64,000 nucleotides of DNA from Vitrella brassicaformis CCMP3155 (GCA_001179505.1 CDMY01000254.1:62001-126000); one strand, 5' to 3'. Numbered from the stretch's first letter, positions 1 to 9,320 are shown. Made by a program: numbers and translations. Notes: generated by a model from the sequence alone, not told the origin.

Positions 1-1503
1 GCATGTAGAGACCTGGAGGGCACAACACGCAGTACGCAACTGCATCAGACAAACCAATGCACTGTCCTCCTACATGTGTGGACGAGTGCATGCTCACCTC
101 TGTGGAGGGCGCAGACCCGCGTGAAGGCCTGAGGGAGCTCCGCCGTGCCGTACATCGGGTACAGAAACGGACTGCCTGTAAGACATCAAACATAGTGCCA
201 GAATACCGGCGTGTTCAGACATCCAAGTCCGTCGTATGGCGTACTGTATGCTTTTTTTTACCCGCGGCGTATATGCCCAGGGACCTGATGATCCGCTCCA
301 CACGATCCACACCTGCATGAATAAGCATCCCCTTTCACTGGGTGGCGCGACGCTTTTCGTGTCTCTCTCTCTCTCTCTCTGTCACCTTGTCGTGCGGTCC
401 ACTGTGGGTGTCTCTCCTCCCCCATGCAGACGCCGTACGTCATCAGGGACTGCAGCCGGTCTGTCAACTGATGCGACCCCATGTACTCGAACCACGTCCC
501 GTCCAACACACCCGACTCATCGCCACCATCTCCACTATCCTCAGCCTCGTTGTCGGTGTCGCTGGCAGCAGCGGCGGCAGCGGTGGAAGCCGTGGGCAGG
601 TCTCTGCCTTGTAGCGCCTTGGGGGTGTGGAATGCGGCAGAGCTTTGGGCAGCGGTGAGTGAGGTGAGGAACTTCATGAGCAGCCGCTTCTCGATGAGCG
701 AGAGGGCCGACGACTGGAAGATGTCACTCCGGCTGAACGGCAGCCGGAACCAGTCGCCATCAGACCACGTAAACAGCCCTTCCATTCCTGCAGACAGACA
801 GACAGTCAGACGCACAACAACACGAGGACATGTTGTATACGCCTGATGTTGGTGTGATGGCACGTGTACTGGCCTTTGAATTCCAGGTATCTGGACACCC
901 CCGATCGCAGAAGAATGTCAACTAGGTCGCTGCGGCAGTACAGCAGCCGGGGACAAACGTCCACACAGAACTGATTCGATTGCCGCACAAGCCGCTCTTC
1001 AGTCGTCTCACATCCACCGCCACCACCACCACCACCACCAGAAGCCGAGGCAGAAGCAGCAGAAGCTGGCTCACTTTCGTCGAGCAGGAACGGTTCAGTG
1101 GCCATAAAGCGGTCCACAAAACACGATGACGTCACGCCGCTATCGCTGCCGACATCGTCCAGCGGCACCCACTCTTCGCCTGGTGGTGGTGCTGTTTGGC
1201 CATCTGCCTGGAGCTGTTGATCTGTGGGTGGCTCGGGTTGTTCGCGTCCCTGTGACCACAGCTTGAGCTGTTTGTAGTTGAGGCTGCTCCAGTTGCCGCC
1301 ATAGTAGTCTCGGCCGTCCAGATGAAGCACCTTCAAACCACAGCGAGACAACGATCTGAACAAACAGAGGTAAAGACGAGGGCGAATGAACACGCGTGTT
1401 GCAGTCGTCTGTTTGACTGTCCTAACGCGGCGATGAGGCATTCGATGAGTCCCGTGCCGACGACGCACACGTCGAACTCCCGCTCGCCCTCGTCGAGGAG
1501 CAT
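1..1503 (-). CDS. Rab escort protein / GDI family (Rab geranylgeranyltransferase component A), multi-exon, C-terminal part runs off the left edge
   Basis: Exons read MLLDEGEREFDVCVVGTGLIECLIAA, LSRCGLKVLHLDGRDYYGG, FCVDVCPRLLYCRSDLVDILLRSGVSRYLEFK, RLPFSRSDIFQSSALSLIEKRLLMKFL and SPFLYPMYGTAELPQAFTRVCAL. Long acidic/Ala inserts favour REP over GDI. An alternative in-frame ATG lies at 1620. Confidence 0.9.
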
Positions 1504-2264
1504 GCGGCTGAGGTTGCGACGACGGACGAGGGCCAGAAAGCGAGGGCTCTGATCTCCTTCGCAAGCAAAGTGCCACGACTCCAATGTGCTTAGGGTGTCT
1601 ATGAAACCTTCGCTAGCCATCAGCTCGCAAGTATGAAAGCTCTCTCACCCTTGTTACCTTCCATACTCCCCAGTAACAAACAGCAACAAAAGGGAAACAA
1701 CCACAATTCAATTGCCAAGCCTTTCTGAGTTTGGTGGTGTACGCCTTCAGACTACCAACGGTGCGCTGAGTGCATGCTTGGTGCATGCGGAAGAATGACT
1801 TACAGCACATTCAATCATTGAAGCGAACGATGCAAGTGCGAAGGCGAGACCCGAAGGGCCGAGCCGAGCCACGACTAGCCACAGATTTGACGCATACTGA
1901 TTCATGGGTGGGACGGCAGGTCAGTCAATCCTATGGTCCCTTTCCATGCAATCGGACCATTCATACTACTGGGTTGGCAGGAGGATTGAATCAATGCCTG
2001 CATTGGCCAACACGATCCACACTTCTCTTTCACGTTCCTCCCCCTGTCCTCCCTCTGTCGACGGCCAAGCAAAATGCCTTTCTTGCGCGACCAAACCAAC
2101 CAAGCAGACAGACAGCCGACGAGTGACTGAGAAACGAGGCAGGCAGGGCAGAACAGCAACGAGAAATGCGTCCACACGACTACAACACGACTACAAACCT
2201 ATATATGTATGTACATGTACGCCAGCAAGCGCGAAATGACCCCCGTGGGTTCTTGAGTATCGCT

Positions 2265-5200
2265 TCAGAGTGTGAGTGTGTGCTCGATGAGTTTGTCGTC
2301 GATGGGGGTGGTCTGGAAGCCGAGCATCTTGGTGATCCCTGTGAACGTCGTGTTGTCCTTGCTGACTGTGGCGGTCAGCTGCAATACGCACGCACGACAA
2401 ACACATGGACGAATATGACGCACAAGAGAGGGGGGATTGGTGGTCGTCTGCTGAAGCTCACCGTTTTGATGCCTTCTGTCTTGGCGATCTCCACGAGCTT
2501 GGTCATCATTGCCGTGCCAAGGCCCTTGCCCTGCCAATGGACAAACACACAAACACACAAATGCCCAATTGGTGTATGTGCCCCGAGGTGGCAGGCAGGT
2601 GTCGCACCTGTGCAGCGTCGCGAATGAGCATGCGGTACTCGGCAGTGGTGTCGCGCAGACTCCGCTTGCGGTAAGCACAGAACCCCACCATCCTGACACA
2701 CACAACACAAGGGGGGATGTACATCCTTGTGGATTCTTGACCCCTTGGCTCCGTTTTCCCTACCGCCCCTTGTCGTCGGTGGCGATGAGGACGATGCCCC
2801 TGTCGTAGAGCGAAATGCCAGAGGAGGACAGAATGAGATGACGCCGATCAGGTGAGTGAACCTGCGGTTACCGATCGTAGTCGGTGTTGCACAGCTGGGA
2901 CAGGCGGCTGTGGGCCGTCCGCTCAGCAAACGACACGTCCTTGAAAAACCGCTGGCGAAGGCTGTGCAACCAGAAACAAGGGAACGTGTTTCGGCATCAG
3001 TCTCTCTGCGCCTGCGTGTGTGTACCTCACCTTCGCTCAGAGATATCGGTGTGGAACTCGATTAACAGAGGCTCATCCTGACAAACAAAGCGCAATGTGC
3101 TCATTATCTCTTCTCTTTCCCTATCTCTCTGGGGTTACCGATGCACGGATGGGTCTCACAGTGACAACCTCGTTGTTGCGTAGCGTCACTTTGGACACGT
3201 ACTCCAATGGGTAGCCGCGGATGGCCACCTTGGGCACCTTTTGGCCAGGCTTGGCCACTATGACGCGTGCATCGAGGGCCAGCAGCTGGGACGGCGAGGC
3301 CAGCAGCGGGTTGATGTCGCACTCCATGATCAGTGGCTGGTCAACCACCATGGCAGAAAACGACACAAGTATCTTCTCGAGCTCGGCGATGTTGATGGGC
3401 AGACGGCCGCGGATCTGCACGCACACAAACAGTCCGGTCCAAGGGAAGAAGTCACGTGTATATGTTTCGGTCTGCTGACCCCCTGAAGCGCTTTGTATAT
3501 CTTGGTTTCTTTCATGAGAGCGCGGGCAGTGACGCTCGTGAGGGGTGGCAGGGCCAACGAGGTGTCATGCATCACCTCCACCAATGTACCGCCAGAGCCA
3601 AACACCTGCATGCCCCAACAATCGCATACAGACGCGTGGCTCGGCATTTCATGTGAGTTGTGGGTTCACTTACAACAACAGGGCCGAACTGTGGGTCGAC
3701 ACTGGATCCGACCAGCAGCTCGTAGCCACTCAAATCAGCCATTTGTTGCACCGTCACGCCCTGTTCATTTACGCACAACAACACACACTACGTGTGAGAT
3801 TTATGTACAGGCCTCAGGCTTGACCTGGAAGTCCTCTGGTGAGTATTTGGCGGCGACGTTCTTTTGGATAAGGTCGAACGCCTCCCGCACCATGTCCTCA
3901 GAGCTGAGATTCAGCTGCACGCCCCCCACGTCGGTCTTGTGCGTGATGGTCTCAGAGTTGAGCTTCACAACCACAGGATAACCCAGCTGCGCCACATGAC
4001 AGTCACAGAGAAAGATGTGGGAAACAACTGTGCGCATGGGTGTGAGTGCTCCTTGGGTGCCTGTACGTCTCGTGCAGCCGTGACAGCGTCTTCAACGGTC
4101 TCGCAGAGGATGGTCTCGACCACGGGGATACCGTAGGCTTTCAGAACCTTCAAACATGCCACGGCAAACACAGAATGACGGCAGTCTTCCTCTACCTGGC
4201 TTCCTTACACGTACTTGTTTCGACTCCAGTTCCGTGAGGATGCTTCGATCACTGTTGCTAACGTCCTGCAGGAGCCCCTTGACAGCTCGCTGCTTCTCGA
4301 GCAGCTCGGGCGTCACTTCAATGCGAGCCTGTCGATACATCCACACGACACGCACGCACGTGTGTAAGTAAGTATGAATTGTTGATGCCGTCAGTCGGTG
4401 CGTGGCCGTACCGTGGGAGTCTCGTACAACTTAAGTTCAGACAATCAGCAAACGCATGCCTATGCAGTCGTCCATTCATTTATTCTGTCTGTCTTATGGC
4501 GTGCTTGCCTTCTCGAGGCGAGATCTCAGGCTCCAGATCTTGGCAAACACCGCAGCGGCACTGATGAAACGGACAAACTCAGTCATGATCCTTCGCCTCA
4601 CCCATTTGGTAGATCACCTGTCCGGGTACGGAATTGAAGGCACTCCGTTCTGTTCATTTCAGCCCGCGTACATGCGTAAATAAAATAGACACGGATTTGA
4701 ATATGCCTGGATATGTCGGAGGAAATGACCTTATTGAGGAGCTGGGCACCGCGCTCAACCTCAGAACCTACACGTACATACACCAAGGTACAACACCTAC
4801 TTGCATACACTTACAGAGGTGAAACATAAAGAGTCGCGTACCTCCCATCCAGCTCGCGATCACAGGCACACGAGATTTGTGGGCGGATGGCAGCACCATC
4901 TCGGCTGTGTCTGCGGACACACGAGGTGACGGAAGTGCAATGCTGGTACCATGGCAAAGCGAGAAGTGTACGCATGCAAAATGCCTCTCACTTGTAGGCT
5001 CCGTCATGTCCTAAGCGCAGAGGCGGCAACACCCGATTCACACACAAAGTATCGTCCGTCTTCGCGTGCAGTTACCTGCGGTGAGAGTACGACCAGCATT
5101 CCGTCACTGTTGGGGTCCTCGGCCACAACCTCCACTGCCTTGGCATACGTCTCAGGCGACGCATCACCCAACACGTCAACAGGATTGGAGTGGCTCCAAG

Positions 5201-7366
5201 CTGGAGGAAGAAACTGGTTCAGTCTGCACACAAATACATATACACACGTGTACATGGCTTCTGGTGTACGCGGCACGTGTTGGCTCACTTGTTGATGGTC
5301 GACTCATCGAGTGTGGCAATCTCAGCGTCGTTGAGAGCAGCAGCATCCGTCGCCAGCACGCCAGGACCACCGGCATTCGTGATGATCACCAAACGGGGAC
5401 CTGCATACCAGGACGCGCATACACTCTGCGACACGTCACCCGCGTATTGGTAGGCCCCGTCTTACCCTTTGGCAGGTTTTGTTTTGCGAGTGTGAGTGCG
5501 ACATCGAACAGCTCTCCGATGGTGTCAACTCGCAAAACGCCTGCAGAAGGGACGGGCAGCCCATTGTGTTCCACTTGCTCATGCGTGTATGCGTGTTCCA
5601 CATCAGACCTGCGCGCTTCATGGCGGCATCGAAGATGTTATCAGCGCCCGCAAGCGAACCCGTGTGGGACGAGGCAGCCTTGGCAGCAGCCTGCACGCAG
5701 AAGTGCGGTGTGTACTTGATGGGTGTGGTGTGCATTGTGGGTGGCTGACTGCTTGCCTCGGTCCGGCCAGCCTTGATGACAATCAAAGGCTTCTTCAGCG
5801 CGACCTCCTTGGCAGCGGACAGAAAGGCACGCGCGTCGCCTGTTTGACCAAGGCACAGCAAGAAAGCACGAGGCCGCAATATAGAAGAACATGTAAACCT
5901 CATTGCTGTCTTCAGTTCGTACCGATTGCTTCCATATACATCAATATGGAATCAGTGTGAGGATCCTTGCCTTAAGATCAGATCGGACGGATCAGACACC
6001 TTTCTGCCATGTGCATGTCCTGGGATTTGCTGCCTGCATTACCGAGGTAGTCGATGAGGTCTGCCCAGTTGACATCAGCCATGGAGCCTATCGAGACGAA
6101 CGCCGAGAATCCGATCTTCTCCTTGAGTGACCAGTCCAGCACCGAAGTGCACATCGCGCCCGACTGAGAGATGAAACCGATCTTCCCGGGCAGGGCCATC
6201 TCTGACGGCAACAGGTGAGTCAGCATCATAGCTACGCACTAGACGTCAGCGCCCACTCACCTGACGCAAATGTCGCGTTCAGACCAACGATCGGATTCAT
6301 GAGCCCCTGCAAACGCACAAGAATAGCCACACGCGTTGGCATATAGTGGTCTTGTCCGCACCAGGCAGTTGGGCCCGACGATGCGGATGCCGCCCTTCGC
6401 CGCCGTCTCTAACAGCTGCACGCATGTGGCAGACGCACACAGGAAAACTCATGTCAAACGCATGGAGGGAAAGCAAGTGACTTTTTGAGTTTCTGTGTTA
6501 CTTGTTCTTCCAACTTGACGCCCTCTGGACCTATCTCCTTGAACCCTGCAGAGATGACTACCGCACCTCGAACGTTCTTCTCGACACACTCTGCCATCAG
6601 GGCCGGGATGCCCTTTGAAGAATACCCAGAGCACCACATCTCAGCAATGAAGGAACGAGTAGTGAACCTACCTTAGACGGCGTGACGATCACAACCAGGT
6701 CGACGTCACCAGGAATCGCCTGTCACATGCACGAAGCATGCACTCGCTCCTACGGCGTACGTCTACGACACTGCCTTTTCACCTACCTTGACGGAAGGGA
6801 AGCATTGCACTCCCATGACCTCTTCACGCTTGGGATTCACTGCATATATGGGCCCGCTGAACCCGCCCGTGACGAGGTTGCGCATCAGTGTGCCGCCCAC
6901 ACCTGCGATCAGAAGACACCCACGTGCAAACAACCGTCACCTGATCACCCATGTGCCCCGACACCCTCACTTCTCGGCTTGTCTGTGGCCCCAATCACTG
7001 AAGAGGGGAGGAGAAAAGAAAACAGAAAACACTCCATATGCGCCACAGAGGAATGCCTTTTACATTTTCATTCGTACCAGCGACAGAGCGCGGCGTGAAG
7101 ATGGGACTGAGCCCGCTGTCTTGCACCGTCATGATGGCCTCGACAGGATCTGGGGGCGCCGTGGCAAAGTCGACCTCCTTCCATGTTGAAGAACTGACAC
7201 TCGAAGAGAACCGGACGGGCAGCTTACTGAGGAAGCTGTAGGCGAGAACAGATGTGGGATGGCTGATGATGCTGGCTCCCAGGCCCGTCTGTGGGAGAAG
7301 GCTGCTGCCCTGCCGCCGGGCACCAGCAGCCGCCACACGCAAAGTGCTCGCGAAGCGAGGAAACAT
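2265..7366 (-). CDS. Fused ADP-forming acyl/acetyl-CoA synthetase (CoA-binding + ligase + ATP-grasp) with C-terminal GNAT domain (bacterial Pat-like architecture); N-terminal mitochondrial presequence; many introns
   Basis: Leader [19 protein letters not shown]. Exons include [115 protein letters not shown] and the GNAT motif [12 protein letters not shown]|[21 protein letters not shown]. Stop after IEHTLTL at 2265. Confidence 0.9.
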
Positions 7367-7731
7367 CTCGAACCTCGTGAGGTGGTGGCGACGGTCGTGC
7401 AGGGGGCCACACGACGAGAGGGCGCGCGAAAACGGCCCGGGGGAGAGAAGGGAGAAACTACTACTAGGCGCCCCCGAACAAGGGCGATCGCGCTCACCTG
7501 TGATGTTGATGATGGAATGAATGGAACATCCATGTCAACGAAACGCTGCGTGGCGCAGCATGTTACGACTGAATTAACGCCACTGGTCTGGTGTGGGTGA
7601 TCCACGTAAGCTCTTTTGCCGCGACAAAATGTCAAGGGTCATCAGTGATAGACATATGCGCCCCGCCGCCCCAGCTGCCTGGCAGACATCCAACGGCGCT
7701 CAAGAAGTGAGCAGACCGTATCCCGTGCAGC

Positions 7732-9320
7732 CTACAGTCCTTTATTCAGAAGGACCTCTGTCACCGGCTCCCCATCTTCCGTCCTCAGTTCATGAAATGA
7801 CGGCTCGAGATGCGTGACAGAAAGCTTCATTTTCTGAGGGAAGAGGGCGATGGCGGCAGGCAAGGCGCCCCACAGGCTCAAGGAGATTATGCTCACCTCC
7901 GTAAGCACCTATATGACATACAAGACGACACAATGTGTTGACGCTGTGACGACTGATGAGAAGTGTGGGCAATATGATACCTTCAAGGCTTTGGTCTTGC
8001 TGACAAGGGGTATCCTGAGGGCAAGGGCGATGAGCGGTGGAGGGAGGATAAGGACGGGAGCCGGCAAAACGATTCGGGATATGGCCACTTGTGTTAGTGC
8101 ATGTCTGGCTGCCAGCCGGGATTTGCCGAGCGTTCGACCGGACGAGTCCTGGAAACAGTAAGAATGTGTTTTCTGACGCCTGCATTATGTCCGGCTCACC
8201 TCAACGGGGATGCCCTGCAACAAGAACGGGGAATGGATCTGCTCTGGATTGTGAACTGTGCTTTTATGGCTCACTTCAATGAGTTCGTTGCTTCTCATGA
8301 GCACTGCATTGAACACCCCAGCACCTGCCACTGCCGTGAATGGAACCACCCTTTGGAGCACTGTTCTGGAGCCAAGCGACATGCCGCTCAGACAGAAGGG
8401 AAGATGCCGAGAGTCTCCGTTCACCCCACAACCTACCTCATGCCAGGCGAGAGCGTGGCTCTTTTGAGCCCTTCGTTCAGGCCCACCGCCAAGCTGACAG
8501 ACACCGCTGTGGCAGAACTGCATATACAGCCGCAGACAGGAGAGGAGAAGTCATGGTCTCGCTGGTCCATCGTATTGCCTCTGCAATGAGAGTGCCTACC
8601 CGTAAGCCATCAGAGTGTTCTTAGTCTCATTTCTTCTGGCCTCATCGGACGGATCCTTGGACTTGTTGGCGTTCGCCCAATTGAACCTACAAGACGAAAC
8701 AAGTTCACGTGGGGACCTACATCGAGTTGTTGAGACGAGAGATGTCGACCTACAGCGCGTTGTACGTCTGGTTGACCTACACCGGTAGACACCGAACGAT
8801 TTGGTGAGTTGCGCTGGCTGTCCACCCACTGTACCTACCCATTGCCAGAGAGCAGCATTGGCGACCGTCGGGGGACTCAACAACATGCCTGCAGGACGTA
8901 TACATGGATGTATGTTGTATGTATGTAGATCTGCGTCGAACACCCCTGCGGCAGCGCCTCACCCACCTGCCACGATGGGTATGTTGACAGGCACGAACGC
9001 AGCCAGTCGGAGGGGGAGGGGGATGGGCTCGTGGGTCTGGGGATGCACACTGGCATCCAGAAGCGTCTGCGCCTCCCATAGCCTCTTGAGCTCGGGGGAG
9101 CCAGGAGGCGGTGCCGAACCGGCCTTGCTGAAACCAACACCCGACAAAGCATATGAGAAGGTGGTGGAAGGTTATGACATCATTCGCCTCACTTTTTGAA
9201 CTCATCGATGAGGGCCTGCGCTTGAAGCAAGTCTGCATCCGTCTTCAGCAGAAGGGAGGGGTCAATCAGTTTGACGAAGTGCTGTACGCGACCAAAGTAG
9301 GTCGACTGGTCAGACGCCAT
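7732..9320 (-). CDS. SFXN: Sideroflexin (mitochondrial tricarboxylate/serine carrier family)
   Basis: Exons DQSTYFGRVQHFVKLIDP, LWEAQTLLDASVHPQTHEPIPLPLRLAAFVPVNIPIVAG, VPFTAVAGAGVFNAVLMRSNEL, AISRIVLPAPVLILPP and LPAAIALFPQKMKLSVTHLEPSF...LLNKGL*. Start codon uncertain. Confidence 0.92.

What the first reader, a model, noticed from the sequence alone, without database searches (positions are those of the whole stretch)
2265..7366. Mitochondrion-targeted bacterial-type ACS(ADP-forming)-GNAT fusion that retains the catalytic histidine
Seen: CoA-binding, ligase and ATP-grasp modules followed by a GNAT domain (QGKGLG), an Arg/Ser/Ala-rich presequence, and the phospho-His motif SSHTGSLAG (His codon 5664-5666). 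Known: enterobacterial Pat/PatZ lysine acetyltransferases have this architecture but lack that His. Eukaryotic ADP-forming ACS enzymes such as those of Giardia and Entamoeba have no GNAT. Inference: a horizontally acquired, fully intronised enzyme that may both make ATP/acetate from acetyl-CoA and acetylate mitochondrial proteins, coupling anaerobic energy metabolism to lysine acetylation.
Basis: partly seen in the sequence, partly recalled or inferred. Interest (0 to 1): 0.72.

Follow-up and report, generated by a model that had tools for sequence, protein, structure and literature searches.

The report
Algal acetyl-CoA enzyme fused to acetyltransferase
This alga expresses a bacterial-type gene that joins an ATP-making acetyl-CoA/acetate enzyme, with its key histidine intact, to a protein-acetylating domain behind a mitochondrion-like address tag; the family is common in bacteria and occurs in a few other eukaryotes, but nobody has tested it.

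Summary
A minus-strand gene (ATG 7366, stop 2265) has 32 exons and encodes 970 aa. One spliced 3,275-nt transcript contig matches the model to the base. The domain order is CoA_binding_2, Succ_CoA_lig, Ligase_CoA_2, ATP-grasp_5, GNAT.

The phospho-His motif is present (His336, codon 5666-5664) and aligns with His254 of the solved archaeal ACD1. E. coli PatZ lacks this segment. The other ligase residues I checked and the GNAT residues (Glu900 = PatZ Glu809; QGKGLG) are intact.

The first 63 residues have no acidic residue, are Arg/Ser-rich and show no signal-peptide-like hydrophobic stretch. That fits a mitochondrial presequence, but location is only inferred.

- The protein belongs to a very large bacterial family that NCBI already names "bifunctional acetate--CoA ligase/GNAT" (about 52-54% identity).
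- The same fusion, with the His, exists in glaucophytes, a cyanidialean red alga and Barthelona. So "eukaryotic ACDs have no GNAT" is wrong.
- The donor lineage is unresolved.
- I found no enzymology for any His-retaining fusion.

Verdict: a new eukaryotic member of a known, uncharacterised kind, of moderate interest. The scan had not noted this gene before.

The parts
1970..7509 (-). Transcribed span of the gene (mRNA)
   Evidence: The spliced contig X1 record 1 covers 1970..7433. X8 record 15 runs colinear with the genome up to 7509.
2265..7366 (-). CDS: 32 exons, 2,913 nt, 970 aa. Exons (low-high): 7078-7366; 6971-6997; 6787-6902; 6672-6719; 6502-6612; 6362-6415; 6261-6306; 6043-6201; 5923-5970; 5757-5839; 5609-5690; 5466-5540; 5289-5400; 5076-5223; 4992-5010; 4842-4910; 4730-4767; 4618-4649; 4509-4560; 4412-4429; 4215-4328; 4067-4147; 3825-3986; 3674-3760; 3480-3605; 3139-3414; 3031-3077; 2872-2961; 2764-2799; 2608-2692; 2462-2530; 2265-2378
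   Evidence: I derived the model by hand from GT/GC-AG sites and a cyanobacterial guide. The anchor positions in the contig table match the exon sums exactly, and the model aligns end to end with homologues.
7112..7366 (-). N-terminal extension (aa 1-85) absent from bacterial homologues. Residues 1-53 look like a presequence, with a possible R-2 cleavage context (VRF|SSS).
   Evidence: Alignment. Composition, hydropathy (max KD over 11 residues = 1.15) and hydrophobic moment (0.5 for residues 1-18). The extension lies in the same exon as the start of the conserved core.
7130..7132 (-). Second in-frame Met (M79), close to where bacterial proteins start. A possible alternative start for an untargeted isoform.
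   Evidence: Model and alignment. This is inference only.
6362..7111 (-). CoA-binding domain (aa 86-215)
   Evidence: Pfam CoA_binding_2 on exon 3. 52-58% identity to bacterial homologues.
5488..6199 (-). Succ_CoA_lig domain (aa 232-372) carrying the phospho-His loop
   Evidence: Pfam E-values of 3.6e-18 and 2.7e-18. 70-75% identity to bacterial homologues.
5664..5666 (-). Codon of His336, the predicted phospho-histidine
   Evidence: Aligns with His254 of 4xyl chain A. Coordinates. PatZ has a 4-residue gap at this position.
5691..5756 (-). GC-AG intron (66 nt, in frame, donor GCAAGC) immediately upstream of the His exon
   Evidence: Contig positions 2071-2919 (849 nt) equal the sum of exons 2-12 only if this stretch is removed. 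Homologues have no insertion here.
4430..4508 (-). Second GC-AG intron (79 nt, donor GCAAGC)
   Evidence: It is the only splice solution that restores the 18 nt missing from my first model, and it yields LYETPT, matching cyanobacterial IYETPV.
4412..4429 (-). 18-nt micro-exon (LYETPT). The other micro-exons are 6971-6997 (27 nt) and 4992-5010 (19 nt).
   Evidence: Enumeration of splice paths against the contig length and alignment to homologues.
4557..5466 (-). Ligase_CoA_2 domain (aa 380-520)
   Evidence: The per-exon Pfam hits are weak. The domain is clear in full-length homologues, with 55-59% identity.
3211..4232 (-). ATP-grasp_5 domain (aa 575-800), containing His623 (3941-3939) and Asp765 (3318-3316)
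   Evidence: Pfam hits on five exons. His623 aligns with His68 of 4xyl chain B. DINPL is conserved.
3139..3414 (-). Exon 26 (aa 733-824): one exon encodes both the end of the ATP-grasp domain and the start of the GNAT domain
   Evidence: It matches ATP-grasp_5 profile positions 168-221 and aligns with PatZ residues 642-727, across that domain border.
2268..3168 (-). GNAT domain (aa 815-970), with Glu900 (2640-2638) and the Q-x-x-G-x-G motif QGKGLG (2610-2608 plus 2530-2516)
   Evidence: Pfam Acetyltransf_1 on the motif-A exon. Glu900 aligns with PatZ Glu809. 32-39% identity to bacterial GNAT domains.

Best explanation
Shown: this is an expressed nuclear gene of a chromerid alga. Earlier notes of this scan name it Vitrella brassicaformis; I did not verify that. 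The gene encodes a 970-aa single-chain member of the bacterial 'bifunctional acetate--CoA ligase / GNAT N-acetyltransferase' family, preceded by an extension of about 55-85 residues. Inferred: the extension is a mitochondrial presequence. The N-terminal roughly 700 residues are a working ADP-forming acyl-CoA synthetase. At site I, acetyl-CoA and phosphate would give acetyl-phosphate, the phosphoryl group would pass to His336 on a swinging loop, and the loop would carry it to ADP in the ATP-grasp domain near His623 and Asp765. The net result is acetate + ATP, and the reaction is reversible. The C-terminal GNAT, with general base Glu900 and P-loop QGKGLG, would use acetyl-CoA to acetylate protein lysines, as Pat/PatZ acetylates AMP-forming acetyl-CoA synthetase. 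My best guess for the coupling is this. When organellar acetyl-CoA is high, the enzyme converts the surplus to acetate and ATP, and at the same time acetylates and switches off acetate re-activating enzymes. That would avoid a futile cycle.
For: Gene and transcript: 32 exons, a continuous ORF, and one spliced contig whose length equals the model exactly. Exon 26 alone spans the ATP-grasp/GNAT border. Family: 51-54% identity over about 880-930 residues to cyanobacterial and other bacterial proteins with the same Pfam order. Ligase competence: His336 = His254 alpha of ACD1. His623 = His68 beta. The YME Glu297 and the DINPL Asp765 are conserved. The phospho-His domain is the most conserved part, at 70-75% identity. 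Family members that lost the His, including PatZ, show a degraded loop and in some cases also lack the beta His. GNAT competence: Glu900 = PatZ Glu809 and QGKGLG. Targeting: no acidic residue in the first 63 aa, six R/K, an amphipathic start, and no hydrophobic stretch fit for a signal peptide. The first in-frame ATG lies in a transcript that is colinear upstream to 7509, with an in-frame stop at about 7535. The algal homologues (Cyanophora, Gloeochaete, Cyanidiococcus) also carry Arg-rich extensions of 72-111 residues, while the anaerobe Barthelona has none.
Against: No localisation predictor or experiment was available, so mitochondrion versus cytosol (start at M79) or another compartment remains open. 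The only characterised relatives, SePat and PatZ, use the ACD-like part as an acetyl-CoA-sensing, catalytically dead regulatory domain (PMC8556138, PMC12184503). I found no enzymology for any His-retaining fusion, including the cyanobacterial ones. The GNAT part is much less conserved (32-39%) than the ligase part. In the other eukaryotic fusions the GNAT motifs are degenerate, so the GNAT may matter less than the ligase. The futile-cycle coupling is pure inference.
Confidence: 0.55

Rival explanations
1. The protein is essentially an ADP-forming acetyl-CoA synthetase, for substrate-level ATP synthesis or acetate activation. The GNAT tail is a structural or regulatory remnant with little or no protein-acetylating role.
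For: The ligase domains are 52-75% identical to bacterial ones, while the GNAT is only 32-39%. In Cyanophora, Gloeochaete and Cyanidiococcus the ligase His is kept but the GNAT general-base and P-loop positions are altered or lost. Precomputed Pfam finds no GNAT in P0150, P0301 or P0307.
Against: In the Vitrella protein itself the GNAT general base (Glu900) and the Q-x-x-G-x-G motif are intact, and the domain aligns to its end with bacterial homologues.
Confidence: 0.22
2. The protein is a Pat/PatZ-type lysine acetyltransferase. The ligase-like part only senses acetyl-CoA and drives oligomerisation, and the retained His has no catalytic consequence.
For: This is the only experimentally established mode for this architecture. 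PatZ and SePat bind acetyl-CoA in the N-terminal domain, show cooperativity and form tetramers (PMC8556138, PMC12184503). Exon 26 and other exons hit PatZ structures 9isq/9it0.
Against: All four ligase catalytic positions I checked are kept, and the phospho-His domain is the best conserved part. Lineages known or likely to be ligase-dead have lost the His loop. Overall identity to PatZ is only 34%.
Confidence: 0.13
3. The protein is not mitochondrial. It would be cytosolic (translation from M79, or a non-functional leader) or sent to another compartment such as the plastid.
For: No predictor was run. M79 lies about where bacterial proteins begin. Cyanobacteria are among the nearest relatives, and a cyanobacterial sister position is not rejected, which would fit an originally plastid-related gene.
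Against: The leader lacks the hydrophobic signal peptide that complex red plastids need (max KD 1.15). It has the composition of an mTP. The transcript starts upstream of ATG 7366 and has no earlier in-frame ATG.
Confidence: 0.3

Closest known systems
Bacterial and cyanobacterial 'bifunctional acetate--CoA ligase family protein / GNAT family N-acetyltransferase' (NCBI name), e.g. Trichormus variabilis ATCC 29413 (P0026), Caldilinea (P0391), Rhodothermus (P0357)
   Same: The order of the five Pfam domains is identical. The proteins are about 900-940 aa and 51-54% identical end to end. The SHTG phospho-His loop, the beta His, the DINPL Asp, and the GNAT Glu and P-loop are all shared.
   Different: The Vitrella gene is nuclear, has 31 spliceosomal introns and carries an N-terminal extension of about 85 residues. 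The bacterial proteins are named from sequence only; I found no biochemical study of them.
Type I GNAT lysine acetyltransferases Pat (Salmonella) and PatZ/YfiQ (E. coli; PDB 9isq, 9it0)
   Same: An N-terminal ACD-like region of about 700 residues followed by a C-terminal GNAT. The catalytic Glu is conserved (PatZ E809 = Vitrella E900) and so is the Q/R-x-x-G-x-G motif.
   Different: PatZ has lost the phospho-His segment. It shows a 4-residue gap in my alignment, and PMC12184503 reports L245 in place of ACD1 H254. Its ACD-like domain is regarded as catalytically inactive (PMC8556138). Identity to the Vitrella protein is only 34%.
ADP-forming acetyl-CoA synthetases (ACD): Ca. Korarchaeum ACD1 (PDB 4xyl), Pyrococcus 2csu/1wr2, and the fused single-chain enzymes of Giardia and Entamoeba
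   Same: The CoA-binding, ligase and ATP-grasp modules are shared. The alpha His254 and beta His68 equivalents are present. TIGR02717 AcCoA-syn-alpha is the best NCBIfam match for the exons.
   Different: These enzymes have no GNAT domain. The archaeal enzymes are two-subunit. From my own knowledge, the protist enzymes are cytosolic and lack a presequence.
Eukaryotic ACD-GNAT fusions: Cyanophora paradoxa (P0150, P0215), Gloeochaete (P0302, P0304, P0305), Cyanidiococcus yangmingshanensis KAK4531373.1 (P0218), Barthelona sp. PCE KAL0236829.1 (P0236)
   Same: Same full-length architecture with the SHTG His retained. The algal ones also carry Arg-rich N-terminal extensions.
   Different: They are only 42-46% identical to the Vitrella protein, less than bacteria are. 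They do not form a supported clade with it. Their GNAT catalytic motifs are partly degenerate, whereas Vitrella's are intact. All are annotated as hypothetical.

Membership tests
NDP-forming acyl-CoA synthetase (ACD) superfamily | CoA-binding + Succ_CoA_lig + Ligase_CoA_2 + ATP-grasp_5 modules | tested here: met
   Exon-wise Pfam hits in the right order. TIGR02717 is the best NCBIfam hit. PDB hits to 4xyl, 2csu and 8wzu.
NDP-forming acyl-CoA synthetase (ACD) superfamily | Phospho-histidine on the swinging loop (His254 alpha in ACD1) | tested here: met
   His336 in [11 protein letters not shown] aligns with AAASHTGSIAG of 4xyl_A, which places H254.
NDP-forming acyl-CoA synthetase (ACD) superfamily | Second-site residues in the ATP-grasp part (His68/71 beta, Asp209/212 beta) and the conserved Glu of the Y-M/I-E motif | tested here: met
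   His623 = His68 of 4xyl_B. Asp765 in DINPL and Glu297 in YME are conserved across His-retaining members. The functional roles of the Asp and Glu are recalled from the Pyrococcus literature and were not checked here.
NDP-forming acyl-CoA synthetase (ACD) superfamily | Acetyl-CoA + ADP + Pi <-> acetate + ATP + CoA activity | not testable with these tools
   Needs an enzyme assay.
Type I GNAT protein acetyltransferase (Pat/PatZ) | Large N-terminal ACD-like domain followed by a C-terminal GNAT in one polypeptide | tested here: met
   Continuous ORF and a single spliced contig. Exon 26 spans the domain border.
Type I GNAT protein acetyltransferase (Pat/PatZ) | GNAT general base (PatZ E809) and acetyl-CoA P-loop Q/R-x-x-G-x-G/A | tested here: met
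   Glu900 and QGKGLG.
Type I GNAT protein acetyltransferase (Pat/PatZ) | ACD-like domain catalytically dead because the catalytic His is absent (as the family is described in PMC8556138 and PMC12184503) | tested here: not met
   The His is present in Vitrella and absent in PatZ. I therefore do not file the protein as an orthodox Pat/PatZ.
Type I GNAT protein acetyltransferase (Pat/PatZ) | Lysine acetylation of AMP-forming acetyl-CoA synthetase or other proteins | not testable with these tools
   Needs an assay.
Bifunctional acetate--CoA ligase / GNAT family (NCBI naming) | Full-length collinear similarity to named members, both halves included | tested here: met
   BLASTP gives 50-54% identity over model residues about 65-970, against about 900 residues of 120 named or unnamed members. 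MAFFT alignment.
Mitochondrial matrix proteins with a cleavable presequence | N-terminal extension relative to prokaryotic homologues that is positively charged, free of acidic residues, amphipathic, and lacks a signal-peptide h-region | tested here: met
   85-residue extension. 0 D/E, 6 R/K and 18 S/T in the first 62-63 aa. Hydrophobic moment 0.5 for residues 1-18. Maximum KD over 11 residues is 1.15.
Mitochondrial matrix proteins with a cleavable presequence | Prediction by a trained tool (TargetP, MitoFates) or experimental localisation | not testable with these tools
   No such tool was available here. The joined model was not sent to any search tool.

The most novel reading that the evidence does not exclude
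A genuine enzyme-catalysed lysine-acetylation system sits inside a eukaryotic mitochondrion. It is a Pat-type acetyltransferase physically fused to a catalytically live ADP-forming acetyl-CoA synthetase. One polypeptide would then both harvest ATP from acetyl-CoA and write acetyl marks. Alternatively, it would make its own acetyl-CoA from acetate and ATP to feed the GNAT. Algal homologues would share this organellar role.
Probability: 0.2. Interest if true: 0.7.

Novelty: new member of a known kind. Interest (0 to 1): 0.45.

Why it matters
Mitochondrial protein acetylation is widely held to be mostly non-enzymatic because potent mitochondrial acetyltransferases are lacking. PMC12357098 states this, although I saw only its abstract.

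A Pat-type acetyltransferase with a mitochondrial-looking leader would be a natural counter-example worth testing. Here it is fused to an apparently live ATP-yielding acetyl-CoA synthetase.

The His-retaining ACD-GNAT family has thousands of bacterial members and no published enzymology that I could find. Any assay would therefore also settle whether NCBI's 'bifunctional' label is deserved.

For chromerid and apicomplexan biology, the gene adds a candidate substrate-level phosphorylation step to an unusual mitochondrion.

If the protein turns out to be an ordinary ligase with a decorative tail, the finding is a routine annotation.

Tried and rejected
1. Word search with the nearest plasmid-borne homologue (Kovacikia, L002). 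It returned only cyanobacteria and did not reach the alga's own database entry or any eukaryote.

2. Exhaustive representative search with exon 26. No hit exceeded 56% identity, so I found no close relative and not the window's own entry. The best hits (P0121, P0122) looked like intron-split eukaryotic genes. They proved to be frameshifted bacterial genes on bacterial contigs.

3. My first 31-exon model was 18 nt shorter than the transcript contig. Enumerating splice paths gave one sensible solution, an 18-nt micro-exon at 4429-4412.

4. I considered that the in-frame 66 nt at 5756-5691 might be a 22-residue insertion next to the His. Contig-length arithmetic and the alignment reject this; it is a GC-AG intron.

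5. Bacterial contamination is rejected by 31 introns, spliced transcripts and a eukaryotic neighbour gene (GDI).

6. Plastid targeting: I found no signal-peptide-like segment.

7. A quick tree grouped all eukaryotes together (SH-aLRT 93). With more bacteria and a careful search this dissolved. AU tests leave both a cyanobacterial sister position and an algal clade open, so I make no donor claim.

8. Literature searches for a eukaryotic or characterised His-retaining ACD-GNAT fusion gave nothing relevant.

9. Not done, by the operators' rule: sending the joined 970-aa model to Pfam/NCBIfam, the structure predictor, the exact look-up tools or the protein atlas. The joined model was used only inside the sandbox for local BLAST, MAFFT and trees.


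Full report
**What is there**

The stop-free frames on the minus strand of 2000-7700 carry a series of short conserved pieces separated by short non-coding stretches. I searched these pieces one by one, by reference. They hit, in order:
- CoA_binding_2;
- Succ_CoA_lig (two pieces, E about 3e-18 each);
- Ligase_CoA_2 (weak);
- ATP-grasp_5 (five pieces, down to 5e-16);
- Acetyltransf_1.

NCBIfam's best match for the ligase exons is TIGR02717, the acetate--CoA ligase alpha subunit. Solved-structure hits are the archaeal ACDs (4xyl, 2csu, 1wr2), ADP-forming hydroxyacid-CoA ligases and the PatZ structures 9isq/9it0.

**Gene model**

I used a cyanobacterial homologue as guide and read the sequence directly. 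This gave a model with GT-AG borders throughout, except for two GC-AG introns that share the donor GCAAGC.

Four runs were laid on 1850-7800. Runs X1, X2 and X8 hold spliced contigs. X1 record 1 is 3,275 nt long and runs from 1970 to 7433.

My first model was 18 nt too short between two anchor points of that contig. Enumerating all splice paths of the right length gave one sensible answer: an 18-nt micro-exon at 4429-4412. It encodes LYETPT, where cyanobacteria have IYETPV.

The final model has 32 exons, 2,913 nt of CDS and 970 aa. Every interval between contig anchors now equals the sum of the exons in it:
- 423 nt for the stretch holding exons 15-22;
- 849 nt for exons 2-12.

This also shows that the in-frame 66-nt GC-AG intron just upstream of the His exon is removed. 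X8 record 15 is colinear with the genome up to 7509. The reading frame has a stop near 7535 and no ATG before 7366, so ATG 7366 is the first in-frame start.

Two facts answer the worry that the GNAT exons might be a separate gene. Exon 26 (3414-3139) by itself encodes the last third of the ATP-grasp domain and the first GNAT residues. The spliced contig is also continuous across all exons.

**Family and catalytic residues**

The model aligns end to end with cyanobacterial proteins of the same domain order, at 51-54% identity. Identity to E. coli PatZ is 34%.

Residues kept in the ligase part:
- His336 (codon 5666-5664) aligns with His254 of the ACD1 alpha subunit.
- His623 aligns with His68 of the beta subunit.
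- Glu297 of the YME motif and Asp765 of DINPL are conserved.

PatZ lacks the His segment in my alignment. PMC12184503 reports H254 replaced by L245, and PMC8556138 calls the domain inactive for want of the catalytic histidine.

In the GNAT part, Glu900 aligns with the PatZ general base Glu809, and the acetyl-CoA P-loop reads QGKGLG.

Conservation is uneven. The phospho-His domain is 70-75% identical to bacterial proteins, while the GNAT is 32-39%. Within the family, several bacterial lineages have lost the His loop, and some of these also lack the beta His. Loss therefore happens and is visible. The Vitrella protein shows no sign of it.

**N-terminus**

About 85 residues precede the point where bacterial proteins align. 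The first 63 residues contain no Asp or Glu, six Arg/Lys and eighteen Ser/Thr. Residues 1-18 have a hydrophobic moment of 0.5. The most hydrophobic 11-residue window scores only 1.15 on the Kyte-Doolittle scale, too low for a signal peptide.

In an alga with a complex red plastid this argues against the plastid route and for a mitochondrial presequence. No trained predictor and no experiment were available, so this remains inference.

The homologues of Cyanophora, Gloeochaete and Cyanidiococcus also carry Arg-rich extensions of 72-111 residues. The Barthelona protein has none. A second Met (M79) lies where bacterial proteins begin and could give an untargeted isoform.

**Distribution and origin**

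The family is very large in bacteria. Each of three word searches hit the limit of 8,000 scored candidates. Named members come from Cyanobacteria, Chloroflexota, Acidobacteriota, Myxococcota, Verrucomicrobiota, Armatimonadota, Rhodothermus and an Altiarchaeota MAG.

Eukaryotic full-length fusions exist in:
- Cyanophora (two);
- Gloeochaete;
- Cyanidiococcus, plus two close metagenomic relatives;
- Barthelona.

All of them keep the SHTG His, but their GNAT motifs are partly degenerate. A recent survey mentions ACD in anaerobic protists and some aerobes without noting the fusion (PMC11976288).

Nothing in the 1.8-billion-representative library is closer than 56% identity to exon 26.

In a careful tree the Vitrella protein is a long branch in an unresolved polytomy. 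AU tests reject neither Vitrella + cyanobacteria (p 0.44) nor Vitrella + red alga + glaucophytes (p 0.45). The gene is of bacterial type. Whether it came through the plastid lineage or by a separate transfer cannot be told from these data.

**Function**

The shown facts are the architecture, the transcript and the retained residues. The rest is inference:
- a live ADP-forming ligase making acetate and ATP from acetyl-CoA, or the reverse;
- a GNAT that acetylates proteins;
- a mitochondrial location.

The coupling I favour is that surplus acetyl-CoA is turned into ATP while acetate-reactivating enzymes are switched off by acetylation. This is modelled on Pat acting on Acs in bacteria and is speculative.

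I found no biochemical work on any His-retaining fusion. A 2025 review of cyanobacterial acetylation lists only cGNAT2 as a confirmed acetyltransferase (PMC12224894).

**Limits**

It was used only in the sandbox for BLAST, MAFFT and trees. The organism name comes from earlier notes of this scan, and I did not verify it.

**Verdict**

This is a new eukaryotic, probably organelle-targeted member of a known but uncharacterised bacterial family. Interest is moderate.

Noticed in passing
window 5691-5756 and 4430-4508 (minus strand): Two GC-AG introns in one gene share the same donor hexamer GCAAGC (G at +5). Both are removed in the spliced contig.
   Followed up: partly
window 6971-6997, 4992-5010, 4412-4429 (minus strand): Three micro-exons of 27, 19 and 18 nt lie in one gene, each flanked by introns of 65-83 nt. 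Exon finders that rely on ORF length would miss them, and the 18-nt one was missed in my own first pass.
   Followed up: yes
window 809-1576 (minus strand): The downstream neighbour has an open frame that matches Pfam GDI (GDP dissociation inhibitor / Rab escort protein family) at E 8.6e-12. It is likely the first exons of a Rab GDI/REP gene.
   Followed up: partly
window 7559-7800: Separate transcript contigs in runs X1, X2 and X8 start about 50 nt upstream of this gene's 5' end. This implies a closely spaced neighbouring gene. The two ORFs I tried there gave no Pfam match.
   Followed up: partly
P0150, P0215, P0302-P0305, P0218 (eukaryotic homologues): In glaucophyte and cyanidialean ACD-GNAT fusions the ligase His is kept, but the GNAT general base or P-loop is altered or lost. 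One Cyanophora paralogue also has a 321-residue N-terminal extension; I did not analyse that extension further. The GNAT tail may be decaying in these lineages.
   Followed up: partly
L003 5037-7778 and L004 4257-7044 (bacterial metagenome contigs): The bacterial orthologues on these long ENA contigs are called as two or three overlapping ORFs. These are probably frameshift errors of the assemblies rather than real split genes, and they can mimic intron-split eukaryotic genes in hit lists.
   Followed up: no
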